DNA of 64,000 nt, taken from assembly GCF_003918875.1 (NCBI RefSeq), contig NW_025766956.1, forward strand, positions 434,001-498,000, written 5' to 3'. The notes under the pieces are model-generated. The model did not search any database. It saw nothing but the letters and a program-made list of their open reading frames with translations, and was not told where the DNA came from. The position numbers and the translations under genes were made by a program. The first letter of the stretch is position 1; each line of letters starts with the position of its first letter. Shown here one piece after another: positions 3,167 to 64,000 of the stretch. The stretch comes from Haliotis rubra. Lineage: Eukaryota.

Positions 3167-3343
3167 NNNNNNNNNNNNNNNNNNNNNNNNNNNNNNNNNN
3201 NNNNNNNNNNNNNNNNNNNNNNNNNNNNNNNNNNNNNNNNNNNNNNNNNNNNNNNNNNNNNNNNNNNNNNNNNNNNNNNNNNNNNNNNNNNNNNNNNNNN
3301 NNNNNNNNNNNNNNNNNNNNNNNNNNNNNNNNNNNNNNNNNNN
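3167..3343. other. Assembly gap (N run)
   Basis: Run of n. Confidence 1.
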
Positions 3344-5189: not shown

Positions 5190-8100
5190 TGTATCTTGAC
5201 TCCAGATATATACATGATGTATCTTGACTCCAGATATATACATGATGTATCTTGACTCCAGATATATACATGATGTATCTTGACTCCAGATATATACATG
5301 ATGTATCTTGACTCCAGATATATACATGATGTATCTTGACTCCAGATATATACATGATGTATCTTGACTCCAGATATATACATGATGTATCTTGACTCCA
5401 GATATATATACATGATGTATCTTGACTCCAGATATATACATGATGTATCTTGACTCCAGATATATACATGATGTATCTTGACTCCAGATATATACATGAT
5501 GTATCTTGACTCCAGATATATACATGATGTATCTTGACTCCAGATATATACATGATGTATCTTGACTCCAGATATATACATGATGTATCTTGACTCCAGA
5601 TATATACATGATGTATCTTGACTCCAGATATATACATGATGTATATCTTGACTCATGATATATACATGATGTATCTTGACTCAGATATATACATGATGTA
5701 TCTTGACTCCAGATATATACATGATGTATCTTGACTCAGATATATCATGATGTATCTTGACTCAGATATATACATGATGTATCTTGACTCCAGATATATA
5801 CATGATGTATCTTGACTCCAGATATATACATGATGTATCTTGACTCCAGATATATACATGATGTATCTTGACTCCAGATATATACATGATGTATCTTGAC
5901 TCCAGATATATACATGATGTATCTTGACTCCAGATATGTACATGATGTATCTTGACTCCAGATATATACATGATGTATCTTGACTCCAGATATATACATG
6001 ATGTATCTTGACTCAGATATATACATGATGTATCTTGACTCCAGATATATACATGATGTATCTTGACTCCAGATATATACATGATGTATCTTGACTCCAG
6101 ATATATATATACTTGATGATGTATCTTGACTCCAGATATATACATGATGTATCTTGACTCCAGATATATACATGATGTATCTTGACTCCAGATATATACA
6201 TGATGTATCTTGACTCCAGATATATACATGATGTATCTTGACTCCAGATATATACATGATGTATCTTGACTCCAGATATATACATGATGTATCTTGACTC
6301 CAGATATATACATGATGTATCTTGACTCCAGATATATACATGATGTATCTTGACTCCAGATATATACATGATGTATCTTGACTCCAGATATATACATGAT
6401 GTATCTTGACTCCAGATATATACATGATGTATCTTGACTCCAGATATATACATGATGTATGTATCTTGAGATATATACATGATGTATCTTGATCCAGATA
6501 TATACATGATGTATCTTGACTCCAGATATATATACATGATGTATCTTGACTCCAGATATATACATGATGTATCTTGACTCCAGATATATACATGATGTAT
6601 CTTGACTCAGATATATACATGATGTATCCAGATATATGCATGATGTATCTTGACCAGATATATACATGATGTATCTTGATATATACTGATGTATCTTGAC
6701 TCCAGATATATACATGATGTATCTTGACTCAGATATATACATGATGTATCTTGACTCCAGATATACATGATGTATCTTGACTCCAGATATATACATGATG
6801 TATCTTGACTCCAGATATATACATGATGTATCTTGACTCCAGATATATACATGATGTATCTTGACTCCAGATATATACATGATGTATCTTGACTCCAGAT
6901 ATATACATGATGTATCTTGACTCCAGATATATACATGATGTATCTTGACCCCAGATATATACATGATGTATCTTGACTCCAGATATATACATGATGTATC
7001 TTGACTCCAGTATCATGATGTATCTTGACTCCAGATATATACATGATGTATCTTGACTCAGATATATACATGATGTATCTTGACTCCAGATATATACATG
7101 ATGTATCTTGATCTTGAGATATATACATGATGTATCTTGACTCCAGATATATACATGATGTATCTTGACTCAGATATATACATGTATCTTGACTCCAGAT
7201 ATATATGATGATGTATCTTGATGTATCTTGACCAGATATATACATGATGTATCTTGATCAGATATATACATGATGTATCTTGACTCCAGATATATACATG
7301 ATGTATCTTGACTCCAGATATATATATCTTGACATGATGTATCTTGACTCCAGATATATACATGATGTATCTTGACTCCAGATATATACATGATGTATCT
7401 TGACTCCAGATATATACATGATGTATCTTGACTCAGATATATACATGATGTATCTTGACTGATGTATACATGATGTATCTTGACCAGATATATACATGAT
7501 GTATCTTGACAGATATATACATGATGTATCTTGAGATATATACATGATGTATCTTGACTCAGATATATACATGATGTATCTTGACTCCAGATATATACAT
7601 GATGTATCTTGACTCCAGATATATACATGATGTATCTTGACTCCAGATATATACATGATGTATCTTGACTCCAGATATATACATGATGTATCTTGACTCC
7701 AGATATATACATGATGTATCTTGACTCCAGATATATACATGATGTATCTTGACTCCAGATATATACATGATGTATCTTGACTCCAGATATACATGATGTA
7801 TCTTGACTCCAGATATATACATGATGTATCTTGACTGATATATACATGATGTATCTTGACTCCAGATATATACATGATGTATCTTGACTCAGATATACAT
7901 GATGTATCAGATATATACATGATGTATCTTGACTCCAGATATATACATGATGTATCTTGACTCCAGATATATACATGATATCTTGATGATGTATCTTGAC
8001 CCCAGATATATACATGATGTATCTTGACTCCAGATATATACATGATGTATCTTGACTCCAGATATATACATGATGTATCTTGACTCCAGATATATACATG

Positions 8101-9012
8101 ATGTATCTTGACTCCAGATATATACATGATGTATCTTGACTCCAGATATATACATGATGTATCTTGACTCCAGATATATACATGATGTATCTTGACTCCA
8201 GATATATACATGATGTATCTTGACTCCAGATATATACATGATGTATCTTGACTCCAGATATATACATGATGTATCTTGACTCCAGATATATACATGATGT
8301 ATCTTGACTCCAGATATATACATGATGTATCTTGACTCCAGATATATACATGATGTATCTTGACTCCAGATATATACATGATGTATCTTGACTCAGAGAT
8401 ATATACATGATGTATCTTGACTCCAGATATATACATGATGTATCTTGACTCCAGATATATACATGATGTATCTTGACTCAGATATATACATGATGTATCT
8501 TGACTCCAGATATATACATGATGTATCTTGACTCCAGATATATACATGATGTATCTTGACTCCAGATATATACATGATATCTTGATCAGATATATACATT
8601 GATCTTGACTCCAGATATATACATGATGTATCTTGACTCCAGATATATACATGATGTATCTTGACTCTTGACTCCAGATATATACATGAGATATATACAT
8701 GATGTATCTTGACTCCAGATATATACATGATGTATCTTGACTCCAGATATATACATGATGTATCTTGACTCCAGATATATACATGATGTATCTTGACTCC
8801 CAGATATATACATGATGTATCTTGACTCCAGATATATACATGATGTATCTTGACTCCAGATATATACATGATGTATCTTGACTCCAGATATATACATGAT
8901 GTATCTTGACTCCAGATATATACATGATGTATCTTGACTCCAGATATATACATGATGTATCTTGACTCCAGATATATACATGATGTATCTTGACTCCAGA
9001 TATATACATGAT
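5190..9012. repeat. 28-bp tandem satellite (GTATCTTGACTCCAGATATATACATGAT)n, about 3.8 kb
   Basis: Read directly; roughly 135 highly homogeneous units. Confidence 0.98.
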
Positions 9013-9581
9013 GACGGAGCTTGGAATCTCGATACACTAGAAATGCATGATGTGTATTTTCGGATAATGTACCAAACCTTTTTTGACCCAGTACGCATGC
9101 ACGTCAAAACCTTTATGTAGACATGTTTTCTTGAATACGTTCGTGAGCTTTAGCAGTTTCCAAAGGCAGGATTCCGTGTGAAATCGAAAGAGTAAACTGA
9201 CCATCACTCTGCGCGGTAGTAGTGCTTATCAGCACTCATCTTGATGTTGAGAACTGACGTTAGGAACATTTTAATTTAACAGCTTTCAACACTCCGCACA
9301 CAGTTTGGTCGATTAATGGCTTTTGTGAGACGGTCCTAAACTCACCGTTTATGTTTCCGCAGTTGCAATGTCATCTTGGGTTCCGGCTAGAACTTTCTTC
9401 ACGTTTGGGAGCGGATGGAAATCTGACGGAGACAGATGAGGAGAAAAGGAGGGTCCTGAATAGGATGTATTGTAGTCACCGTAATGACTGATTACTGCCG
9501 CGGCACATTGTCGTGATGGAAAGCACGCCTTTTCTCAGACAAGATCATCCCGTGCTTGGCGCGTTACCTTTTATCAGATTT

Positions 9582-33794: not shown

Positions 33795-34672
33795 AGATAG
33801 ATATAGCTGTAACAGAGCAGTCAATGATAGAAGCTGTCAGATATAGCTCTAACAGTCAATGATTGTAGCTGTCAGATATAGCCATAACAGAACAGTCAAC
33901 TTTAGTAGCTGTCACGTATAGCCACAACAGAACAGTCAATGATAGTAGCTGTCAGATATAGCTGTAACAGAGCAGTCAATGATAGCAGCTGTCAGATATA
34001 GCTATACCAGAACAGTCAATGATAGTAGCTGTCAGATATAGCTATACCAGAACAGTCAATAATAGTAGCTGTCATACATAGCTATACCAGAACAGTCAAT
34101 AATAGTAGCTGTCATACATAGCTAAACCAGAACAGTCAATAATAGTAGCTGTCATACATAGCTATACCAGAACAGTCAATGATAGTAGCTGTCAGATATA
34201 GCTATACCAGAACGGTCAATGATAGTAGCTGTCAGATATAGCTATACCAGAACAGTCAATAATAGTAGCTGTCAAACATACCTATACCAGAAGTCAATGG
34301 TAGTAGCTATCAGATATAGCTATACCAGAACAGTCAATAAAAGTAGCTGTCATACATAGCTATACCAGAACAGTCAATGATAGTAGCTGTCAGAGATAGC
34401 TATAACAGAACAGTCGATGATAGTAGCTGTCAGATATAGCTATACCAGAACAGTCAATAATAGTAGCTGTCAGATATAGCTACCGGTATACCAGAACAGT
34501 CAATGATAGTAGCTGTCAGATATAGCTACCGGTATACCAGAACAGTCAATGATAGTAGCTGTCAGATATAGCTACCGGTATACCAGAACAGTCAATGATA
34601 GTAGCTGTCAGATAAAGCTACCGGTATACCAGAACAGTCAATAATAGTAGCTGTCATAGATAAAACAGTCAA
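33795..34672. repeat. 40-bp minisatellite (gaacagtcaatgatagtagctgtcagatatagctatacca)
   Basis: About 21 units; the last four carry a 6-bp insertion. Confidence 0.95.
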
Positions 34673-37879: not shown

Positions 37880-38829
37880 GGTGTAAGTAATCATAGGTGA
37901 TGGAGGAACACGATGTCTATCTATAAAACTGTCATGTACTGATGATGTGTCTAACCAGAATCGCAGTGTTTCTTGTTTTGCAAGATATTTCTGTGCCGTT
38001 GTATTTCCATCTTATTGTACATGGTCCACAGATGCCCTTGTCACCCTGGTTTTTTTTTTTTCAAAAGCATACATTTAGATGCATATGTATGTTGTCAAAT
38101 TAATGTGATTATCATGCATATCATGCACCATAATATATTCACACCCTTGGCATCCATGTCCACGGGGTTACAGTAATAACACAGACACTCCAGCTTTGCA
38201 TAATGATTGTTTATTCTGATAATCCCTATGAACATGTCATCATCTGTCAGCGGTACTGAGTATTATCATGCAGTATGTGGGGCAGGCTGGCTACAGTGTG
38301 GTACACACATCCACATACACATATGATGGGAAGAGGATGGGAGCAGAGGACAGAGGGCATGGAAGGAGGGACATAGGAGAAGGAAAACATCTCGCAACAG
38401 AGGATATGGGCCAAAACGTAGGAAATGGGACATATTGTGATATAGAGAGAGCCTGGGACATATGGCAGAGGACATGGGAGACAAAATTTCAAAGTCAAAG
38501 GATGATTGAATAGATGACATGGGACAAAAGATGAGGGATAACAAAAAAAAGGGCATGGGACAGTAGACGTAAGATAAGTGACACAGGGATAACACATAGG
38601 ACGGGACAAAAATCATTGGATGTAGGACATGTCCCACAGCATGGGACAGAGAACAGGGACACTAGACACTAGACATAGACAAGGACACTAGATATTAACA
38701 TGGGACAAGGCGGGACATACAGGTACATTAAACATGGGACACGGTCACTACAAACAGGACATGTGACAGTGGGTTTCTACACACGATATGTGGACATTAG
38801 AGCTCTTCATAGACTGGATTATTGAGACT

Positions 38830-39298
38830 GGATATTGTAGACAGAAAACAGGTGAGGCTGGACACTGTAGACAGAGGACAGGTGAAACAGGACATTGTAG
38901 ATAGAGGACAGGTGAGGCTGGACACTAGACAGAGGACAGGTGAAACTGGACATTGTAGATAGAGGACAGGTGAGACTGGACACTGTAGACAGAGGACAGG
39001 TGAAACAGGACATTGTAGATAGAGGACAGGTGAGGCTGGAGATTGCAAACAGAGGACAGGTGAGGCTGGACACTGTAGACAGAGGACAGGTGAGGCTGGA
39101 GATTGCAAACAGAGGACAGGTGAGGCTGGACACTATATATAGAGGACATGTGAAACAGGACATTGTAGATAGAGGACAGGTGAGGCTGGACACTGTATAC
39201 AGAGGACAGGTGAGACAGGACATTGTAGATAGAGGACAGGTGAGACAGGACACTATAGACAGAGGACAGGTGAAACAGGACACTGTAGACAGAGGACT
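38830..39298. repeat. 30-bp minisatellite (gacagaggacaggtgaggctggacactgta)
   Basis: Read directly. Confidence 0.93.
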
Positions 39299-49898: not shown

Positions 49899-50728
49899 CT
49901 GTAGATAAGAACAGGCAGCAGATTAAATAGAGTCACTCTCACAACTGACAGGACTTAAACATTGAGCATGAAAGTCTGGCAGATTCACTAGTTTACGATC
50001 TTAATGATCAAAGGAAGAAATTCGGTTTAGGGGGGTTTAAGTAACTGATGTTGAATATTACAATGGTTTCATACATTGTAATTCTGTTCTAAATTAACCT
50101 GGAATCAGTCAAAACTGGATTCTAACAAACGTTGTCTGTACTAGGGTACAATAACAATCATGAATTGACTACAATATATACAACTTATTTCAATGATATT
50201 TTCCCATTTCTTTTCTTCATGTCCTTCTGCAATCTCAATAATCTGGACTAAATATGGATCCAAAGAAGACAGGTATGGAAAGATTCGAAATTACATCCCA
50301 TTCATCAGCATCACATATATGGCAGTAGAGACTGCAGCCAAAACTGCCTCACTGCCTCATTTGAGGTTAATTTTGAGCAGAATATTGTTGTTCCAGATAA
50401 GTCAGGTGTCCAGTTTTGAAAGATTTCACATTTTGCACTATTCATCACCATCACAACAGTAACTGCAAATGAAGCAAGACATGTACTACATGTATTAACA
50501 TCCAAGGCATGTGGTCCCATCTTGTGAAGGTGGGACTCGCAAACAGCGAGTGAATATCTTTCAAGATAGCAATCAGCACTATTCCAGCTATGTCACTGCA
50601 ACCTGTAAACAATCAGGGACAGTCAAACTTGTGTTTGACAGAAAGAGCAACACTAAATGCTGTCTGGGTACAAATACACATTATCAGCAACATCACGCAA
50701 AAAACTTTTACTGCTAGCTGTTACTTAC

Positions 50729-50926
50729 ATGATGCTGTGCTGTGTGGGGTGACGTAGTTTGCAGGGAACACGCCTGTCTTGCCATCAAGCTCTCCTTGCC
50801 ACCAGTCAGGGTTGTCTTTGTTCAACACTGTAATCACATCCTCCTTCTGGAATGTAAGCTCATCAGCATTCTGAGCAGCATAAGCGTAGAGAGCTATCAC
50901 CTGCTCTGCTGCTGCAACAGAACCAA
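50729..50926 (-). CDS. ITSN1: Intersectin exon: SH3E ([27 protein letters not shown]...[15 protein letters not shown])
   Basis: Complete SH3; donor T|gtaagt in phase 1; acceptor ambiguous (50926, 50911, 50908 and 50905 are all in frame). Confidence 0.93.
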
Positions 50927-51127
50927 CTGGAGGGGTTAATATTGCTTCATACATTTGACAGTACATCATGGATTCAAGCTGTATGGAAAACTAAGTCCTT
51001 CACTTGATCTAGATTAAATTTACAGTTATTTCCTGAAGTTTTATTAAAGTGAAAGTTTGTCATTTCCAAATTCACATCTTTCCTGTCCTCAAAACAGGGC
51101 AGTCTCCTCATGTTAAAGGAATGCATA

Positions 51128-53507: not shown

Positions 53508-54450
53508 ACTACTGAGGTGACCTCCCTTCTACAGTGGCACTACTGTGGTCACCTCCCAACTACTAAGGCAACCTTTCTTCTACTGTGGCAACCTCCCTTC
53601 TACTGTGGCAACCTTAAAACTACTGAGGTAACTTCTCTTCTACTGTGGCATCCTCCAATATACTGAGGTGACCTCCCTTCTACAGTGGCACTACTGTGGC
53701 AACCTCCCAACTACTAAGGCAACCTTTCTTCTACTGTGGCAACCTCCCAACTACTGTTGCAACCTTCCTTCTACTGTGGCAACCTTAAAACTACTGAGGT
53801 GACCTCCCTTCAACTGTGGCAACCTCCCAACTACTGAGGTGACCTCCCTCTTCTACTGTGGCAACCTCAAAACTACTGAGGTGACCTCCCTTCTACTGTG
53901 GCAACCTCCCAACAACTGAGGTGACCTCCCTTCTACTGTGGCAACCTCAAAACTACTGCGGTGACCTCCCTTCTACTGTGGCATCCTCCCAACTACTGAG
54001 GTGACCTCCCTTCTACTGTGGCAACCTCCCAACTACTGAGGTGACCTCCATTCTACTGTGGCAACTTCCCAACTACAGAGGTGACCTCCCTTCTACTGCA
54101 GCAAACTCTAAAACTACTGAGGTGACCTCCCTTCTACTGTGGCAACCTCCCAACTACAACGGTGACCTCCTTTCTACTGTGGCAACCTCCCAACTACTGA
54201 GGTCACCTCCCTTCTACTGTGGCATCCTTCCAACTACTGAGGTAACCTCTCTTCTACTGTGGCAACCTCCCAACTACTGAGGTCGCCTCCCTTCTACTGT
54301 GGCGACCTCCCAACTACTGAGGTGACCTCCTTTCTACTGTGGCAACCTCAAAACTACTGTGGCGACCTCCCTTCTACTGTGGCGACCTTCCAACTACTGA
54401 GGTGACCTCCCAACTACTGTGTCAACCTCTCTACTACTGTGGTGACATGT
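53508..54450. repeat. 40-bp (2x20) minisatellite (ctactgaggtgacctcccttctactgtggcaacctcccaa) in the SH3D intron
   Basis: Read directly. Confidence 0.93.
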
Positions 54451-54510
54451 CTAATTCAGTGGCAACATCCCTCAAGGATGGCCTATTCACGACTGAAGTA
54501 GTCATCCTAC

Positions 54511-54632
54511 CTGTAACTCTCCTTCCCACCAGCCACGTGGACTCTTCTGCCGCACCTGGATCATATTGCCAGTCTCCAGGGACAGCTGGCCGTTGCCAGT
54601 AGCCAAGTAGGGTGCTATCACAATTGCAATCT
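54511..54632 (-). CDS. ITSN1: Intersectin exon: SH3D N-part ([41 protein letters not shown])
   Basis: 122 nt, phase 1 to 0; GWWEGELQ as in ITSN SH3D. Confidence 0.95.
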
Positions 54633-54881
54633 CTGGAAAAAAAATTGTCAATAACTAAGATGCTTTCCTGAGTTGTAGAGAATTATCTTTGCCAATTCCC
54701 AGTTGTTCAAGAATTAGATATCAGAGACATAGTCTCTCTTAAGTTAACACTATATCAGTATGTCTCTTCATCACGTAAAGCCTATGGGATATTACATGCT
54801 ATTTGAAGAGATATGGCAATATTTGGTAAGAGGGATATTGGACCAGGAGATGTGGAGGAAGAGGTGGAAGAAGATGTTTAC

Positions 54882-54909
54882 CTGGTTTCTTGGCAATTTT
54901 CTGTCCTGG
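54882..54909 (-). CDS. ITSN1: Intersectin 28-nt small exon (PGQKIAKKP)
   Basis: ttttcag| acceptor, CAG|gtaaac donor; phase 0 to 1; KKP|E junction as before vertebrate SH3D. Confidence 0.85.
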
Positions 54910-55219
54910 CTGAAAACCCAAGAAGAAGTAACTTTATAATTGTAGATATTTGTTCAAGTAAAATCTTAAAAACATAAATGTTGAGAAACACAAGTGTTCA
55001 TGCTGAAGGGATTATTGATTAATACAGAAATATAAATCTGAATCTATATATGATGCTAGAAAATAAATCAGAGTATTGGCCTTAACCATAAGCCTTCAGA
55101 CAAATGAAGAATCATCGTAAAATGGATAAATATACATATGATTGGTATGGTTTATATGATTACATAGCATATAAGATATATATTGTGGACGTGTAAGTGG
55201 AAATGAATGTATGAAGTAC

Positions 55220-56140
55220 CGGAGGAGGACGTGGAGGTTTGTTTGATTGATTCATCAATGTTGTTTTCCCATCCTCTGTGTCAGTGATAGTGATAGTAGG
55301 TGTTGGAGACTTTGGCCCTGTGTTGGCACCAGTCTGTGCAACATCCTCGTACACATCATCACAATATTCTTCAGGTCCACTAAATGACACAGTTTCCAAG
55401 ATGTCAGGGTCTGTCAGTTCTACTGGTATGGGAGGCAGGCTGTCAGCTTCCATGCTTGCTAAGTCAAAGGAGGGTGTTTCTTGTATATTCAACATGTCGC
55501 CAAATGGATCAGGAGCATCTTGGCTAGATATGTTCATTGCAGGAGAAACTGCTGGGGAAAGAGATGGGGACATGGGGTCTAAGTCAGCCAACAGGTCCAG
55601 GGAATTGCTGCTGCCACTTGGTCTCAGAGAGGTGTCTGTCGGGAGGAGACCACTTCCTGATCCTAGAGGGTCCAGAAGTGACGACAAGCCAGGCTCGCTA
55701 CTTATTGCAGGAGTTTCATCAGTTGCATCATCATGGCCAGCAGGAAGGTCTGATGTTGATCCACCTCCCCAGTCTAGGCCTGCAAATGGATCAGCTGTAC
55801 CAGATAATCCAGACTTCTCTTCAGGGCCACTTATTCCCCAATCCATGCCTGTTCCGAGACTTTGATCCTGTCCTTCTATGTTTGGAGTTGTGTTTGTGAA
55901 GCCAGCCTGCAAGTCCATTCCACTAAACAAATTATCTGACTGCATCATGCTTGTGCTTCCAGATTGGAAATCCAGCCCACTGAAGAGGCTATCTGACTGA
56001 GTGGTGCTTGTCTTTCCAGACTGGAGATCTAGCCCAGTGAAGAGACTGTCTGACTGTGTGGTGCTTGTCCCACCCCCTGTTGTGGGACAGGGTGGGTAGT
56101 CTGGTGGAAGAGGTGGAGGCGGAGTGTCATCCCAGTCGGG
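55220..56140 (-). CDS. ITSN1: Large (921 nt, 307 aa) symmetric, probably alternative exon between SH3C and SH3D; acidic, Pro/Ser-rich, low complexity
   Basis: Stop-free 333-aa ORF; gtacag|CCC acceptor and CCG|gtactt donor; phase 0 to 0 fits both neighbours; GC content raised relative to the introns. Confidence 0.72.
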
Positions 56141-57730
56141 CTGTACAACACCAACACACAAACATGCAACAGAAGAGACATACCAACAGAAGAATCATAA
56201 CACAACAACAAAATCTGAGACGGAAAAGTGCAAGAGGTGCAAGGAACCACTGTCTGAGATATTCCACGCCACCCATGTATGCTTACAATTCAGCCTATTG
56301 CCTTACTTCAGCTGACTGAAATCGGCATCATGGTAGACTAAGAGAGTTTAAAACGGGGGAGATTGCAAAGTTGGAGATATCTTTCACAGTTTTTGAGTTG
56401 GGTGTGTGCTGAGTTGACCCAATCCTGCCAATGGTATTTAAACTTACTCGGAATCACCCCTAAGAATGAAGTTCTAAATGTAATAGACAGCATTATTCCC
56501 CTCACTCAACCTGTAAGCTAAGGTTCAAGGCTGTTGAGGCATGGAAGGTACCGGCAAAAAGATACTTGAAACAACAAATATGTTGAAGAAAGTGCAGATA
56601 TCTAACAAATTCTGTGCAGCATGCAAAGGTTCACAACAGAAATGGCTTCAGGCAACGGAGGTGGAAGTGGACGTGACATTGTGTTGTGCACAATGGAATC
56701 AGGAGGAAATTGGAAGCGAAAGTGGTGTGACATGATGTGCTGGAATGAGGACATCTGAGGTGAAAGTGGTGTGACATGATACTCTTCACAATGGAATACA
56801 GAAGGCCTCTGAGAAGAAAGTGGAAGAGTGACGTCATGCACAACAGAGACTTCCAGGTGGGAGGTTGCGTGATTGGAGATGGCACAAAGTGAGGAAGTTT
56901 GATGGAAGGTTGTCCAGTTGTGTTATGGCAGGCTGCTTGATGGGAAGTACACGTCATCAAGTCACATGGTGGCAGGTCACATGATGGAGGCCATTACATT
57001 TCCATGCTCGGTGAATTTGGTAAGACTAAAGATATTTGTCAGGAATGGATTGATGGTGGGACTTGAGTGTCTTGCTTCAATTGTCAGGTATGATTCCACA
57101 TTGGAATCAGGGTAGTGTGTTGGAGAGGTAGCATGGTATGATGTGTAACTTAAGATGCAGTAATTTACAATTCATACCACATAACTTATAATACTTTACA
57201 ATAATGCTGATTCTTAAAGTTACATGTACAATAATAAACATTGATATGATACAGTTCATAATAACCAATGACACCAGCAATAGCTGTATCATTTGTCAAA
57301 ACCTTTTACTGAAGTCAAATAGAAGCTCATGTAATGAACTTAATTAAAAAGGCTGTTTCTCCTAGTATGTGGGTGTATACAATGTAACATATAAGAACAA
57401 CTAGGGAATGATTCTTGATTTAAGTTTTCAACAGTGTTTAACACATACTAATATACCAGCATATCAGAAAAACACAAGCAGTTTCCCAGAATGAACAAGT
57501 ATGAGATCTAACAGGCCAGTTATCAAAATTAGGTACAAATTGGGAATAAGCTGGCTGACGTCCAGGTGATGGTTGTTTGCTGATGCGGGAACAAATGTTG
57601 AGTTCTCTAGAAAAACACCCCCCCAGAGTGAGGTTGCCTGCCTAAGCATAGAGTACTGCTTCCTAAGTTGTTCTCTAGTCACTGGACTCTGAATACTATC
57701 ATGTCCTACAAGTAAGGGAGGTTTCCCTAC

Positions 57731-57900
57731 CTGTATGTCCATCTTCTTGACATAGTTCGCAGGGAAGACACCTGTCTTGTCACCAATACTTCCTGACCAC
57801 CAGTCGCCCTCCACAATGGTCACCAGGATCATGTCACCTTCGTTAAATATCAGGTCGGACTCCTGATCGGAGGTGTAACTGAACATGGCAACATAGTATT
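57731..57900 (-). CDS. ITSN1: Intersectin exon: SH3C (EYYVAMFSYTSDQESDLIFNEGDMILV...[14 protein letters not shown])
   Basis: 170 nt, phase 1 to 0; complete SH3 consensus. Confidence 0.95.
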
Positions 57901-58481
57901 CTGAAACACATATTATCAAATGATTACATAACACCTAATTCCATCACATAACACACATCGTAGTTGTTTGCACCTTAACCTTTGACTGAGTGATTATCTC
58001 CTTAACCTATATGATCTTTCACTGTATTATTCATTTCAGTTTACTATTTCAAACAGTATAGTCCTCCCATGTGAAAACCCACAATTTAAGGGGTCCTAAA
58101 TCTCATTAATTTTCGGTCATTTGATGTCCCTCTCTGTCAAGGCATGACAAACCCTCCTATGAAAGTCACTTCTGATAACTTACTGACCAGCCAGTGAGCA
58201 TGGACCTTAATGCTCTATTGGTGAAGCATCCTAAACAGCATATAATTCTAAGATCTAAGTACAACAACAACGAACAACAAACAATAAATCCTAATGCTGC
58301 TGTACATATCATCAAAATGAATGAAATCTGTACTGTATGATTTCCTAATGTAACATACATCACAAATGACCTTATGGAACTTGTGACCAGGCCCAGTACT
58401 GATCAATATGAAAATATCTGAAAGACTGCAGACTCTATTAAACTGCTGCAGCACAGTAGAGCGTTTCTATTTCACGCTTAC

Positions 58482-58564
58482 CTCCATCTTTTTTCTCAGG
58501 AGCTGGCGAAGACCGAGCGCTTCCATTTCTCTCCAATGTGCTGAATGGACTTGGTGTTGCTGAG
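58482..58564 (-). CDS. ITSN1: Intersectin exon: SH3B-SH3C linker (SATPSPFSTLERNGSARSSPAPEKKDG)
   Basis: ttttacag| acceptor, GAG|gtaag donor; 83 nt, phase 2 to 1, bridges the neighbouring exons in frame. Confidence 0.85.
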
Positions 58565-58752
58565 CTGTAAAATATACATTGAGATAAAGTATGGTACATG
58601 GCCTGTCACAAATATCTAGGTTACTATGGCAGATGATCATTAACGATTGTCCACAAGAGAGGTAACAACATTCACACTTGCAGTGTAATTAGGCATATGA
58701 TGGTACTATATAATGAAATACATTTCACAGTTATATAATTGTGGTAACTCAC

Positions 58753-58811: not shown

Positions 58812-58984
58812 CTGAAAGACAATTCAATATAAGACTAATGTTCCAAGAAAACACACAGTAAATTATTTCAGAAATATTTTAGAAGTTGGAGAAGAAAATG
58901 ATACATAACATAACATGTTCCTATTTGTCTGTCATTACATAACATAAAGTTATTTTTCACAAACTTCAAGATCTTGGTCATCAC

Positions 58985-59131
58985 CTTTCCGTTGAGCTCC
59001 CCCAGCCACCACATGTCTTGTTGCTCCTTGACCGTGATGACATCATCTTTGTTGAATGTGAGGTGGTTGTCCTGTCTTGCCTTCCAGGGGTAGGTTGCCT
59101 TAGCCATCAAACCTTCTGGTGCCTCCTGTCC
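58985..59131 (-). CDS. ITSN1: Intersectin exon: SH3B N-part ([49 protein letters not shown])
   Basis: 147 nt, phase 0 to 0; closely resembles ITSN1 SH3B. Confidence 0.95.
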
Positions 59132-59284
59132 CTGTGTGACAAGCAATAACCATTACAACAGACACCATCTCATATTGCAGAAACACCAGAGGTTGTGTGT
59201 AAGTCATACTTTCACCCGGATATCACCTCTGGACATTGTCAATCCTGGAGCTACTAGACATGAAACCACAGGACATCAAGCCAC

Positions 59285-60238: not shown

Positions 60239-60454
60239 TAAAGGTTTTGTACTATTTGCATGGGCAAGTTATACTATGTGCTTAATAGAAAAATGAAAGA
60301 AATGCAGGTGCAATTTCCTGAACAGATCTGTCTGTCCTGTCAGCCTGCAATAGCAATGTCTAGGAAACTGACAGAACAGGTACTATTCATTTCCTGTACA
60401 AGTAGAGCAGTATGGTATTCCAATAATATGTCTTGTAAGAACAATAGAACTTAC

Positions 60455-60606
60455 CTGAAATTATTTTTATCTATTGCACCGCCCAGACTAGATTGGTCAT
60501 CACATAGTTCCACATAGGCTTTGGGGAACCAGCCTGAATGTCCATCCTTCTCCCCCTTGTACCACTCCTCCATGCCCTCTACTGTGGCACCCTGGTCGTC
60601 GGGGAT
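60455..60606 (-). CDS. ITSN1: Intersectin exon: SH3A C-terminal half (IPDDQGATVEGMEEWYKGEKDGHSGWFPKAYVE...)
   Basis: tttcag|ATC acceptor, CAG|gtaag donor; 152 nt, phase 0 to 2; SH3 W..G....GWFP.AYV motif. Confidence 0.9.
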
Positions 60607-60684
60607 CTGAAACACAATGTCAGGGTGGTGAACTGACTGATTATACTTCACATGGTATACAGAAGACATACTCTACCATTCTTT

Positions 60685-63600
60685 GGGTACTGTGGGTGAA
60701 CTGTCTCACACATGGGGTATGTGTGCCGAACTGTCTGTCTCATACAGAGGGTACAGGTGGTGAATTGTGTGTCTCATACATGGGGTACAGGGGATGACTG
60801 TCTGTCTCATACATGGGGTATGTGTGCCGAACTGTCTGTCTCACACATAGGGTACTGGGGGTGAACTGTCTGCCACACAGGGGGTACAGAGGGTGAACTG
60901 TCTTTCTCATACATGGGGTACAGGGGGTGAACTGACTGCCTCATACATGGGGTACTGGGGTGAACTGTCTGTCTCATAAATGGGGTACTGGGGGTGAACT
61001 GTCTCTCTCATACATGGGGTACAGCGGGTGAACAGTCTGCCTCATACATGGGGTACTGGGGTGAACTGTCTGTCTCAAAAATGGGGTACTGGGGGTGAAC
61101 TGTCTGTCTCATACATGGGGTACTGGGGGTGAACTGTCTGTTTCACACATGAGGTACTGGGAGTAAACTAACTGCCTCATACATGGGGTACTGGCGTGAA
61201 CAGTCTGCCTCATACATGGGGTACTGGGGTGAACTGTCTGTCTCATACATGGGGTACTGGGGGTGAACTGTCTGTCTCATAAATGGGGTACTGGGGGCGA
61301 ACTGACCGTCTCATACATGGGGTACTGGGGTGAACTGTCTGTTTCACACATGGGGTACTGGGAGTGAACTGACTGTCTCATACATGGGGTACAAATGGGG
61401 GTGAACTGTCTGTCCTCATAACATGGGGTACTGGGTGAACTGGGGTGAACTGGTGAACTGTCTCATACATGGGGTATTGGGGTGAACTGTCTGTTTCACA
61501 CATGGGGTACAGGGGGTGAACTGTCTGCATTACACATGGGGTACTGGGGGCGAACTGACCGTCTCATACATGGGGTACTGGGGTGAACTGTCTGTTTCAC
61601 ATGGGGTGTACCTGTCCCATACTGATGGGAGGATGGGGTACTGGGGAGTGAACTGACTGTCTCATACATGGGGTACTGGGGTGAACTGTCTGCCTCATAC
61701 ATGGGGTACTGGGGGTGAACTGTCTGCCTCATACATGGGGTACTGGGGGTGAACTGTCTGTCTCATACATGGGGTACTGGGGGTGAACTGACTGCCTCAT
61801 ACATGGGGTACTGGGGTGAACTGACTGTCTCATACATGGGGTACTGGGGTGAACTGTCTGTTTCACACATGGGGTACTGGGAGTGAACTGTCTGTCTCAT
61901 ACATGGGGTACTGGGGTGAACTGTCTGTCTCATACAACTGTCTGTACTCACTGTCTGTTCCCATACATGGGGTACTGGGGGGTGAACTGTCTGTCTCATA
62001 CATGGGGTACTGGGGGTGAACTGTCTGTCTCATACATGGGGTACTGGGGTGAACTGTCTGTCTCATACATGGGGTACTGGGGGTGAACTGTCTGTCTCAT
62101 ACATGGGGTACTGGGGTGAACTGTCTGCCTCATACATGGGGTACTGGGGTGAACTGTCTGTCTCATACATGGGGTACTGGGGGTGAACTGTCTGCCTCAT
62201 ACATGGGGTACTGGGGTGAACTGTCTGCCTCATACATGGGGTACTGGGGTGAACTGTCTGTCTCATACATGGGGTACTGGGGTGAACTGTCTGTCTCATA
62301 CATGGGGTACTGGGGTGAACTGTCTGTCTCATACATGGGGTACTGGGGTGAACTGTCTGCCTCATATGGGGTACTGGGGTGAACTGTCTGTCTCATACAT
62401 GGGGTACTGGGGTGAACTGTCTCTGCATGGGGTCATACATGGGGTACTAGGGTGAACTGTCTACTCATACATGGGGTACTGGGGGTGAACTGTCTGTCTC
62501 ATACATGGGGTACTGGGGTGAACTGTCTGTCTCATACATGGGGGTACTGGGGTGTGAACTGTCTGTTTCATACTGCCTCATACATGGGGTGTGAACTGTC
62601 CTGCCTCATACTGTGGGGTGAACTGTCTGTCTCATACATGGGGTACTGGGGTGAACTGACTGCCTCATACATGGGGTACTGGGGTGAACTGTCTGTCTCA
62701 TACATGGGGTACTGGGGTGAACTGTCTGTCTCATACATGGGGTACTGGGGGTGAACTGTCTGTCTCATACATGGGGTACTGGGGTGAACTGTCTGTCTCA
62801 TACATGGGGTACTGGGGTGAACTGTCTGTCTCATACATGGGGTACTGGGGTGAACTGTCTGTCTCATACATGGGGTACTGGGGGTGAACTGTCTGTCTCA
62901 TACATGGGGTACTGGGGTGAACTGTCTGTCTCATACATGGGGTACTGGGGTGAACTGTCTGTCTGTCTCATACATGGGGTACTGGGTGAACTGTCTGTCT
63001 CATACATGGGGTACTGGGGTGAACTGTCTGTCTCATACATGGGGTACTGGGGTGAACTGTCTGTCTCATACATGGGGTACTGGGGTGAACTGTCTGTCTC
63101 ATACATGGGGTACTGGGGTGAACTGTCTGTCTCATACATGGGGTACTGGGGGTGAACTGTCTGTCTCATACATGGGGTACTTGGGGGGAACTGAACATGG
63201 GGTCTGAACTGTCTGTCTCATACATGGGGTACTGAGGGAAACTGTCTGAACTGTCTGTCTGTCTCATACATGGGGTACTGGGGGTGAACTGTCTGCCTCA
63301 TACATGGGGTACTGGGGTGAACTGTCTGTCTCATACATGGGGTACTGGGGTGAACTGTCTGTCTCATACATGGGGTACTGGGGTGAACTGTCTGTTTCAT
63401 ACATGGGGTACTGGGGTGAACTGTCTGTCTCATACATGGGGTACTGGGGTGAACTGTCTGTCTCATACATGGGGTACTGGGGGTGAACTGTCTGTCTCAT
63501 ACATGGGGTACATGGGGGGAACTGTCTGTCTCATACATGGGGTACTGAACTGAACTGTCTGCCTCATACATGGGGTACTGGGGTGAACTGTCTGTCTCAT

Positions 63601-64000
63601 ACATGGGGTACTGGGGGGGTGAACTGTCCATACATGGGGTACTGGGGTGAACTGTCTGTCTCATACATGGGGTACTGGGGTGAACTGTCTCATACATGGG
63701 GTACTGGGGTGAACTGTCTGTCTCATACATGGGGTACTAAGGGGGTGAACTGTCTGTCTCATACATGGGGGTACTGGGGTGAACTGTCTGTTCTCATACA
63801 TGGGGTACTGGGTGAACTGTCTGTCTCATACATGGGGTACTGGGGTGAACTGTCTGTCTCATACATGGGGTACTGGGGTGAACTGTCTGTCTCATACATG
63901 GGGTACTGGGGTGAACTGTCTGTCTCATACATGGGGTACTGGGGTGAACTGTCTGTCTCATACATGGGGTACTGGGGGTGAACTGTCTGTCTCATACATG
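60685..64000. repeat. 33-bp G-tract satellite (tcatacatggggtactggggtgaactgtctgtc)n, runs off the window; intronic
   Basis: Read directly; degenerate at the exon-proximal edge, more homogeneous distally. Confidence 0.98.

What the first reader, a model, noticed from the sequence alone, without database searches (positions are those of the whole stretch)
55220..56140. Giant 921-nt cassette exon carrying tandem tepsin-like (AP-4 ear) motifs and other coat-binding motifs
Seen: a 307-aa phase-0/0 exon between SH3C and SH3D, where vertebrate ITSN1 has only a short linker. It has three 20-aa repeats with cores SLFTGLDL, SLFSGLDF and NLFSGMDL, two DPF (ADPFAGLDW, PDPFGD), LDLLADL, an acidic DDVYEDV, and Pro-rich ends (PPPPLPPDY, KPPRPPP). 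A TGCATG lies 23 nt upstream of the acceptor (56168-56163). Established: [GS]LFxG[ML]x[LV] is the tepsin motif that binds the AP-4 beta4 ear; DPF binds the AP-2 alpha appendage; DLL-type motifs bind clathrin; acidic-YxxV fits LIR or YxxPhi; PxxP binds SH3. Inference: an optional multivalent disordered module that could link intersectin to AP-4 or other coats, or autoinhibit its own SH3 domains. I am not aware of such a module being described for intersectin.
Basis: partly seen in the sequence, partly recalled or inferred. Interest (0 to 1): 0.78.

Follow-up and report, generated by a model that had tools for sequence, protein, structure and literature searches.

The report
Optional disordered motif-rich exon in abalone intersectin
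An abalone intersectin gene carries a real, optionally spliced 921-base exon that inserts a 307-residue floppy, acidic stretch full of short docking motifs between two SH3 domains. The proposed partner, the AP-4 beta4 ear, seems not to exist in molluscs.

Summary
Window 56140..55220 (minus strand) is an open 307-codon, phase 0/0 exon with AG/GT splice sites, lying between the SH3C and SH3D exons of a long-form intersectin gene in an abalone (Haliotis).

Same-species RNA contigs join 57731 to 54909, so the exon is skipped in those samples. RNA contigs of a related species cover only the exon, but none crosses a junction.

Against a more distant relative (genomic contig L001) the reading frame is intact, all three indels are in frame, and dN/dS is 0.29 (0.15 over the Pro-rich start and repeats). 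Motif residues are 94% identical against 73% for the rest.

The repeats are 19 aa (57 nt), not 20. The motif recurs four times as FxG[LM]D[LFW].

The AP-4 reading fails on a defining point. Abalone AP-4 beta4 ends right after its trunk. All named mollusc beta4 proteins found (465-559 aa) lack the ear, and no beta4 ear turned up in the genome.

Best reading: a lineage-restricted, optional, disordered docking module for endocytic machinery. The receptor of the tepsin-like repeats is unknown. Another follow-up in this scan had already reported alternative exons in the same gene.

The parts
55220..56140 (-). Optional 921-nt, 307-codon, phase 0/0 exon of intersectin. It encodes an acidic (48 D+E against 7 K+R), Ser/Pro/Thr/Gly-rich region predicted to be disordered.
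   Evidence: dN/dS against L001 is 0.29, and all indels are in frame. It is skipped in same-species RNA contigs and covered by RNA contigs of a related species.
56141..56176 (-). 3' end of the upstream intron: acceptor AG plus a 36-nt block identical in the related species. The block includes TGCATG (56168-56163), an Rbfox-type element.
   Evidence: The background rate of GCATG is about 0.93 per kb per strand, so a single site is only suggestive.
55213..55219 (-). Weak 5' splice site (CCG|GTACTTC) after the exon.
   Evidence: It is conserved as GTACTTT in L001. The neighbouring constitutive exons have CAG|GTAGGG and CAG|GTAAAC.
57731..57902 (-). Upstream constitutive exon encoding SH3C. It ends ...KKMDIQ.
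   Evidence: Pfam SH3. The boundaries are fixed by RNA contigs and by the sequence.
54882..54909 (-). Downstream 28-nt mini exon (PGQKIAKKP plus one base). It is the canonical short SH3C-SH3D linker.
   Evidence: RNA contigs join 57731->54909 and 54882->54632. Sequence.
54510..54632 (-). First SH3D exon (EIAIVIAPY...WWEGELQ).
   Evidence: Pfam SH3_1. RNA contigs.
56090..56122 (-). Pro-rich start PPPPLPPDYPP (residues 7-17): PxxP and PPxY (PPDY) motifs.
   Evidence: Identical in L001.
55898..56068 (-). Three tandem 19-aa (57-nt) repeats, residues 25-81, with cores SLFTGLDL, SLFSGLDF and NLFSGMDL. They are tepsin-like and also fit the LIR-like pattern D-S-L-F-x-G-L.
   Evidence: TRF period 57; regex and shuffles. 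In L001 the cores are SLFSGLDL, SLFSGLDF and NLFGGMDL. dN/dS is 0.146 over codons 1-80.
55769..55792 (-). DPFAGLDW (residues 117-124): a DPF motif fused to a fourth FxG[LM]D[LFW] copy. A related GMDW lies at 55838-55849.
   Evidence: Identical in L001. Only synonymous changes among the differences listed for the related species' RNA contigs.
55577..55600 (-). LDLLADLD (residues 181-188): a DLL-type clathrin-binding motif.
   Evidence: L001 has LDLLAELD.
55493..55510 (-). DPFGDM (residues 211-216): the second DPF. FGDM also fits the gamma-ear/GAE pattern psi-G-[PDE]-[psi/L/M].
   Evidence: L001 has DPFGDI. The related species' RNA contigs have M->T.
55340..55360 (-). DDVYEDV (residues 261-267): an acidic Y-x-x-V that fits a LIR or a YxxPhi signal.
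   Evidence: L001 has NDVYEDV.
55283..55300 (-).
   Evidence: Found in 647 of 200,000 shuffles. Identical in L001. The one listed change in the related species is synonymous.
55220..55240 (-). Pro-rich end KPPRPPP (residues 301-307).
   Evidence: Identical in L001.

Best explanation
This is a genuine protein-coding exon of the abalone intersectin gene that the cell can include or skip.

Skipped form: SH3C and SH3D are joined by the usual short linker, ...KKMDIQ-PGQKIAKKPE....

Included form: a 307-residue, strongly acidic, disordered stretch is inserted. It carries a dense set of conserved short linear motifs:
- four FxG[LM]D[LFW] copies, three of them in tandem 19-aa repeats;
- two DPF;
- one DLL;
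- one FGDM;
- an acidic YEDV;
- a PPxY;
- a PxIxIT;
- Pro-rich ends.

Inferred mechanism: the insert acts as an optional multivalent docking arm. DPF would add low-affinity, avidity-driven contacts to AP-2 appendages and DLL to clathrin, and PxIxIT possibly to calcineurin. Splicing would therefore retune how intersectin scaffolds endocytic sites.

The receptor of the tepsin-like repeats is unknown. In this animal it cannot be the AP-4 beta4 ear, because beta4 has no ear.

Shown: the exon, its frame, the skipping junction, purifying selection, motif conservation, predicted disorder, and the missing beta4 ear. Inferred: every binding partner, and inclusion in this species' own mRNA.
For: - Open frame, splice sites and phase.
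- Gene identity: SH3 domains, intersectin DH exon, SH3E.
- Skipping junctions 57731->54909 and 54882->54632 in two same-species RNA runs.
- In the related species, one run is shown to be RNA by a splice at 57902. Contigs from two runs of two studies cover 55228-56124 and nothing in the flanking introns. They carry an in-frame 9-nt insertion.
- Against L001: 81% amino-acid identity, 85% nucleotide identity in the exon against 74-75% in the introns. dS 0.38, dN 0.11, omega 0.29. Three indels, all in frame.
- Motif residues are 94% identical against 73% for the rest, p 3.5e-5.
- Motif counts exceed shuffles.
- No Pfam domain. Mean pLDDT 45 with no secondary structure over residues 1-249.
- No paralogue in the genome, so the exon is not a repeat or transposon.
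- Precedent for intersectin linkers binding AP-2 appendages: the SH3A-B linker (PMC3645719).
- Precedent for splicing that adds a PxIxIT to an endocytic protein: dynamin 1xB (PMC10542163).
Against: - No contig or read crosses either inclusion junction (57731->56140 or 55220->54909).
- Inclusion is not shown in the window's own species. Its RNA runs hold almost none of the exon's words.
- The lack of intron coverage in the related species could partly reflect divergence near the 85% likeness cut-off.
- Only three species, all apparently close to Haliotis, carry detectable copies. A HMMER scan of 1.84 billion representatives gave one hit.
- No binding was tested.
- DPF, DLL, PPxY and LIR-like strings are short and individually common in disordered, acidic, Pro-rich sequence. 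For example, PPxY appears in 4.7% of shuffles.
- Some motifs in the conservation test were chosen after I had seen the alignment.
Confidence: 0.6

Rival explanations
1. One reading: the tandem [GS]LFxG[ML]x[LV] motifs dock on the AP-4 beta4 ear, as tepsin's motif does, and so couple intersectin to AP-4 coats.
For: One repeat fits the strict tepsin motif and two fit LFxG[ML]x[LV]. The motif's role in tepsin-beta4 binding is stated in PMC13335578. AP-4 itself exists in abalone: a beta4 trunk and a fourth mu-adaptin that best matches AP-4 mu-1.
Against: The abalone beta4 reading frame ends in a stop right after the trunk. Ten named mollusc beta4 proteins, from gastropods and bivalves, are 465-559 aa without PF09066. 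Echinoderm, fish and sponge beta4 are 738-754 aa with it. PF09066 is found in this genome only in the beta1/2 gene. Ear queries from a brittle star and a sponge find nothing.
Confidence: 0.05
2. The repeats and/or DDVYEDV are LC3-interacting regions, so the insert ties intersectin to ATG8-family proteins on autophagic or ATG9 membranes.
For: S-D-S-L-F-x-G-L and D-D-V-Y-E-D-V both fit [DEST][DEST]x[WFY]xx[LIV]. In human tepsin, the stretch holding the beta4 motif is itself reported as an LC3B-binding site using the same Met and Val (PMC13335578). GABARAP, GABARAPL2-like and two LC3-like genes are present in the genome.
Against: The LIR pattern is short and matches by chance in acidic, Ser-rich sequence. 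Gly at the second inner position is unusual for a LIR (my own knowledge). No binding evidence of any kind.
Confidence: 0.12
3. The insert mainly acts within the molecule. Its Pro-rich ends (PPPPLPPDY, KPPRPPP) would occupy intersectin's own SH3 domains. Alternatively, the 307-residue acidic spacer simply changes the reach and geometry between SH3A-C and SH3D-E.
For: Both ends are Pro-rich and identical in L001. They sit directly next to SH3C and SH3D. Autoinhibitory linkers are documented elsewhere in intersectin (SH3E-DH linker, PMC3645719).
Against: This does not explain the strongest constraint, which lies on the FxG[LM]D[LFW], DPF and PxIxIT cores in the interior. Neither Pro-rich end is a clean class I or II SH3 ligand by inspection.
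Confidence: 0.15
4. It is not a functional exon: an open frame kept by chance, or splicing noise, in a long intron.
For: The only junctions seen skip it. No annotated protein containing it was returned by either protein search.
Against: A 344-codon stop-free stretch in 38-45% GC DNA. omega is 0.29 with dS 0.38. Three in-frame indels against L001 and one more in the related species' RNA. Both splice sites are conserved. RNA contigs are confined to the exon.
Confidence: 0.05

Closest known systems
Tepsin C-terminal tail (AP-4 accessory protein; LFxG[M/L]x[L/V] beta4-appendage motif)
   Same: The motif sequence class is the same and lies in a disordered tail. In tepsin the same stretch is also reported to touch LC3B (PMC13335578).
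   Different: The host protein differs (intersectin, not an ENTH/VHS protein). There are four tandem or near-tandem copies instead of one. There is no epsilon-ear motif S[AV]F[SA]FLN. The organism's beta4 lacks the ear that receives the motif. No sequence homology to tepsin was shown.
Vertebrate intersectin 1 SH3A-SH3B linker, which binds the AP-2 alpha and beta appendages (Pechstein et al., as reviewed in PMC3645719)
   Same: An inter-SH3 linker of intersectin used as an appendage-binding peptide region.
   Different: A different linker (SH3C-SH3D). It is optional through splicing, about 20 times longer than the canonical linker, and has a different motif set. No large SH3C-SH3D insert appears in the review's list of intersectin splice variants.
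Disordered motif arrays of endocytic accessory proteins (Eps15, epsin, AP180/CALM: DPF/DPW, DLL/DLF, FxDxF repeats)
   Same: Acidic, Ser/Pro/Gly-rich, unstructured sequence. Repeated short hydrophobic-acidic motifs, including DPF and DLL. Expected low-affinity multivalent binding.
   Different: The dominant repeat FxG[LM]D[LFW] is not a catalogued AP-2 or clathrin motif. There is no NPF, FxDxF, WxxF or canonical clathrin box.
Dynamin 1xB splice variant (alternative C-terminus that creates a PxIxIT calcineurin site; PMC10542163, PMC5524891)
   Same: Alternative splicing gives an endocytic protein a PxIxIT docking site.
   Different: There it is a 7-residue alternative tail. Here it is one motif among many in a 307-residue internal insert. 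Calcineurin binding is untested here.

Membership tests
Intersectin (ITSN) gene | Five SH3 domains followed by DH-PH-C2 on one strand | tested here: met
   SH3 exons at 60451-60669, 58868-59146, 57731-57902, 54510-54632 and 50721-50969. The DH exon best matches Intersectin-1, E 4.8e-25. The SH3E exon matches ITSN1/2 SH3E-DH chains.
Cassette (optional, frame-preserving) coding exon | Canonical splice sites and a length divisible by three in phase 0/0 | tested here: met
   AG|CCC ... CCG|GT, 921 nt.
Cassette (optional, frame-preserving) coding exon | Skipping junction seen in RNA | tested here: met
   57731->54909 in runs X16 and X17, same species.
Cassette (optional, frame-preserving) coding exon | Inclusion junctions seen in RNA | tested here: inconclusive
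   RNA contigs of a related species cover 55228-56124 only. None spans 57731->56140 or 55220->54909.
Cassette (optional, frame-preserving) coding exon | Protein-level purifying selection | tested here: met
   omega 0.29, in-frame indels only, exon 85% against introns about 75% identical.
Tepsin-type AP-4 beta4-ear ligand | Sequence [GS]LFxG[ML]x[LV] in a disordered region | tested here: met
   One strict match, two core matches, four loose matches. Predicted disorder.
Tepsin-type AP-4 beta4-ear ligand | The receptor (beta4 appendage domain) exists in the same organism | tested here: not met
   The beta4 reading frame ends after the trunk. Mollusc beta4 proteins lack PF09066. No beta4 ear was found in the genome.
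Tepsin-type AP-4 beta4-ear ligand | Physical binding to AP-4 | not testable with these tools
   Needs pull-down or ITC with abalone proteins.
AP-2 appendage DP[FW] ligand | DP[FW] in a disordered region, conserved | tested here: met
   Two DPF, both identical in L001. Two or more appear in 1.2% of shuffles.
AP-2 appendage DP[FW] ligand | Binding to the alpha or beta2 appendage | not testable with these tools
   No abalone ear sequence could be obtained in one piece. Needs biochemistry.
Calcineurin PxIxIT docking site | P-x-I-x-I-T in an accessible region, conserved | tested here: met
   PTITIT at 55300-55283. Found in 0.3% of shuffles. Identical in L001. Only a synonymous change in the related species.
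Calcineurin PxIxIT docking site | Binding to calcineurin A | not tested
   Not attempted.
LC3-interacting region (LIR) | [DEST][DEST]x[WFY]xx[LIV] pattern | tested here: met
   DSLFTGL, DSLFSGL and DDVYEDV. The pattern alone is weak evidence.
LC3-interacting region (LIR) | Docking on the ATG8 LIR docking site | not testable with these tools
   Needs binding assays with abalone GABARAP/LC3.

The most novel reading that the evidence does not exclude
The tepsin-class motif FxG[LM]x[LFVW] has a receptor other than the AP-4 beta4 ear. Abalone intersectin uses an optional exon to present four copies of it to that receptor, in an animal lineage whose beta4 has lost its ear. Identifying the partner (an ATG8 protein, the beta1/2 or another appendage, or something new) would reveal a second use of this motif class. 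It would also reveal a splice-controlled link between intersectin and a non-endocytic pathway.
Probability: 0.2. Interest if true: 0.65.

Novelty: new variant of a known kind. Interest (0 to 1): 0.42.

Why it matters
Intersectin is a central endocytic scaffold. Its known splice variants alter SH3, EH or DH domains, or the short/long C-terminus. A 307-residue optional motif array between SH3C and SH3D has not been described in the papers I could search.

The exon shows how a lineage can bolt a whole set of docking motifs onto a conserved scaffold through a single exon, and it gives a compact test object for motif-receptor mapping.

The side result is of separate interest for AP-4 biology. Mollusc AP-4 beta4 appears to lack the appendage that tepsin needs in vertebrates. 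That raises the question of what tepsin-type motifs do in such animals.

The practical reach is limited, because the exon is so far seen only in abalone-like genomes.

Tried and rejected
- **Distant relatives of the insert.** A HMMER scan of 1.84 billion representatives and a word-indexed search returned only P0001, a gene call on a genomic Logan contig (L001) that reads into the intron. An ESM Atlas look-up gave nothing usable.
- **Full-length intersectins of other molluscs.** I could not fetch them. The protein search only returns proteins 0.55-1.75 times the query length, and the gene has no long exon besides this one. Conservation beyond the abalone group is therefore untested, not absent.
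- **Own-genome paralogue of the exon.** None found.
- **AP-4 epsilon appendage family PF14807 in the genome.** No match, and the control rang nowhere, so this is uninformative.
- **A weak PF09066 hit on contig C2177.** By inspection it does not look like an ear.
- **Tepsin gene via ENTH.** ENTH hits fell on three genes. One is a CALM/AP180-type ANTH domain by its sequence; I did not identify the other two. No tepsin candidate was recognised.
- **Complex prediction.** I tested the three repeats against a full-length GABARAP. An insect protein, 95-97% identical to the abalone middle exon, stood in because the abalone gene is split into exons. The result was no verdict (score 0.00, controls not run). 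This counts neither for nor against binding.
- **The original tepsin-motif papers (PMC4805503, PMC4692204).** Not held in the library. The motif definition is cited from PMC13335578 instead.

Full report
**1. What is in the sequence**

On the minus strand, window 56140..55220 reads as 307 codons without a stop. The stop-free stretch is 344 codons.
- The exon is preceded by ...tgttgtacAG and followed by GTacttc.
- The upstream exon (57902..57731) is an SH3 domain ending ...KKMDIQ on a complete codon.
- The downstream 28-nt exon (54909..54882) reads PGQKIAKKP plus one base, and runs into the next SH3 exon (54632..54510).
- So the exon is phase 0/0, and skipping it keeps the frame.

The gene is intersectin.
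- Five SH3-coding exon groups lie on one strand, followed by DH, PH and C2 exons.
- The DH exon best matches Intersectin-1 in the PDB (E 4.8e-25).
- The last SH3 exon matches the SH3E-DH chains of intersectin 1 and 2.

The animal is an abalone.
- The AP-4 beta4 gene of this genome is 93% and 90% identical to the Haliotis asinina and H. rufescens proteins.

**2. The motifs**

There are three corrections or additions.
- The tandem unit is 57 nt, i.e. 19 aa, not 20.
- Only the first repeat fits the strict [GS]LFxG[ML]x[LV]. The shared pattern is FxG[LM]D[LFW], with four copies: SLFTGLDL, SLFSGLDF, NLFSGMDL and DPFAGLDW. GMDW is a fifth partial copy.
- The exon also holds a PPxY (PPDY) and an exact PxIxIT (PTITIT).

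Shuffles that keep the composition:

| Pattern | Shuffles reaching the observed count (of 200,000) |
|---|---|
| Strict tepsin motif, at least one | 53 |
| FxG[LM]D[LFW], two or more, after collapsing the tandem repeats to one copy | 0 |
| PxIxIT | 647 |
| PPxY | 9,435 |
| Two or more DP[FW] | 2,442 |

The peptide is very acidic (48 D+E against 7 K+R) and rich in S, P, T and G. It has no Pfam family. A single-sequence AlphaFold model gives mean pLDDT 45, with no secondary structure over residues 1-249.

**3. Is it a real exon, and is it optional?**

RNA evidence:
- Two runs of the window's own species carry contigs that join 57731 to 54909 and 54882 to 54632. The exon is skipped there, and the neighbouring exon borders are confirmed to the base.
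- Two runs of a related species come from two studies. One is shown to be RNA by a splice at 57902. Their contigs are 90-95% identical to the window. They lie only inside the exon (55228-56124) and on the SH3C exon, not in the introns. They carry an in-frame 9-nt insertion.
- No contig crosses an inclusion junction. Inclusion is not shown in the window's own species.
- The intron-free coverage could be helped by divergence near the 85% likeness cut-off.

Evolutionary evidence fills much of that gap. A genomic contig of a more distant relative (L001, found through P0001) shows:
- the whole frame and both splice sites are kept;
- 36 nt before the acceptor, including the TGCATG, are identical;
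- the exon is 85% identical against 74-75% for the flanking introns;
- dS is 0.38, dN is 0.11 and omega is 0.29; omega is 0.146 over the Pro-rich start plus repeats;
- all three indels are multiples of three.

Motif residues are 76/81 identical, against 172/236 for the rest (p 3.5e-5). One caveat is that some motifs were chosen after I had seen the alignment.

Among the differences listed for the related species' RNA contigs, changes inside motif cores are mostly synonymous. The exon has no paralogue in the genome.

I rate it about 90% likely to be a functional coding exon, and about 80% likely to be alternatively used.

**4. The AP-4 hypothesis**

PMC13335578 confirms that LFxG[M/L]x[L/V] is tepsin's motif for the AP-4 beta4 appendage. 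It also reports that the same stretch touches LC3B.

I then asked whether the receptor exists in this animal.
- The abalone beta4 gene is a single 506-codon exon (G000:C2080:589520-590980). Its best PDB match is AP-4 beta-1 at E 3.7e-108, against 6.6e-59 for AP-2 beta.
- A fourth mu-adaptin best matches AP-4 mu-1. So AP-4 is present.
- But the beta4 frame ends in a stop right after the trunk.
- The named mollusc beta4 proteins in the database are 465-559 aa, with no beta-appendage domain. They come from two Haliotis, Gigantopelta, Littorina, Babylonia, Nucella, Ylistrum, Potamilus, Sinanodonta and Solemya.
- In the five mollusc proteins aligned with the abalone exon, the sequence stops at nearly the same alignment column. 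Brittle-star, fish and sponge beta4 are 738-754 aa and carry PF09066.
- In the abalone genome PF09066 is found only in the beta1/2 gene.
- Beta4 ear queries from brittle star and sponge find nothing.

A defining requirement, a receptor in the same organism, is therefore not met. I put the AP-4 beta4 reading at about 5%.

**5. What it most likely does**

The composition, the predicted disorder and the set of conserved short motifs look like the tails of Eps15, epsin and AP180. These work by many weak contacts with AP-2 appendages and clathrin.

There are two relevant precedents.
- Vertebrate intersectin already uses another inter-SH3 linker (SH3A-B) to bind the AP-2 appendages (PMC3645719).
- Splicing that adds a PxIxIT to an endocytic protein is known from dynamin 1xB (PMC10542163).

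My best reading (0.6) is an optional multivalent docking arm that changes what intersectin gathers at endocytic sites. The receptor of the FxG[LM]D[LFW] repeats is open.

Rivals:
- ATG8 binding through LIR-like cores (0.12);
- intramolecular SH3 occupation, or a pure spacer effect (0.15);
- the AP-4 ear (0.05);
- a non-functional open frame (0.05).

The conserved TGCATG 22 nt upstream of the acceptor fits Rbfox-type control. A single site is weak evidence, since the background is about 0.93 per kb per strand.

**6. Novelty**

A review of intersectin splice variants lists none of this kind. Searches for intersectin together with tepsin, or with mollusc terms, found nothing relevant.

The principle is well known: a scaffold with a disordered motif array whose motif content is tuned by splicing. 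I therefore class it as a new variant of a known kind.

It is so far restricted to abalone-like genomes. I could not test other molluscs, because full-length intersectins could not be fetched with the length-limited protein search.

**7. Limits**
- Run identities and tissues are coded, so nothing can be said about where the exon is used.
- The complex-prediction job gave no verdict and is recorded only under what was tried.

Noticed in passing
G000:C2080:589520-590980 (minus strand; locus L028:5470-6990): Mollusc AP-4 beta4 appears to lack the hinge and ear. The abalone gene is one 506-codon exon ending in a stop right after the trunk. Ten named gastropod and bivalve beta4 proteins are 465-559 aa without PF09066, while echinoderm, fish and sponge beta4 are 738-754 aa with it. 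I did not search the literature for this.
   Followed up: partly
window 55283-55300 (minus strand): An exact calcineurin-type PxIxIT (PTITIT) inside the exon. A PPxY (PPDY) lies within 56090-56122.
   Followed up: partly
window 56324-56354: A 31-nt stretch of the intron upstream of the exon occurs inside RNA contigs of both same-species runs. On both sides it is flanked by sequence that does not lie on the laid stretch (54450-57960). It is probably another transcript sharing a short repeat.
   Followed up: no
window 60701-64000 and 5190-9013: Two very large intronic or flanking minisatellites. One has a 33-nt unit with about 98 copies and runs off the window end. The other has a 28-nt unit with over 130 copies. 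Smaller arrays lie at 53539-54446 (20/40 nt), 33799-34656 (40 nt) and 38823-39297 (30 nt).
   Followed up: no
G000:C2164:409539-409784: The last exon of a fourth mu-adaptin. Its best PDB match is AP-4 mu-1, only slightly better than AP-1 mu-1. Mu1, mu2 and mu3 sit on other contigs (C1336, C890, C2428).
   Followed up: partly
window 58441-58605 (minus strand): The loose ends of the RNA contigs at 57902 read into an exon ending ...SSPAPEKKDG. This fixes the exon upstream of SH3C in both species.
   Followed up: no
window 3167-3343: A run of 177 N (assembly gap or masked). Left untouched.
   Followed up: no
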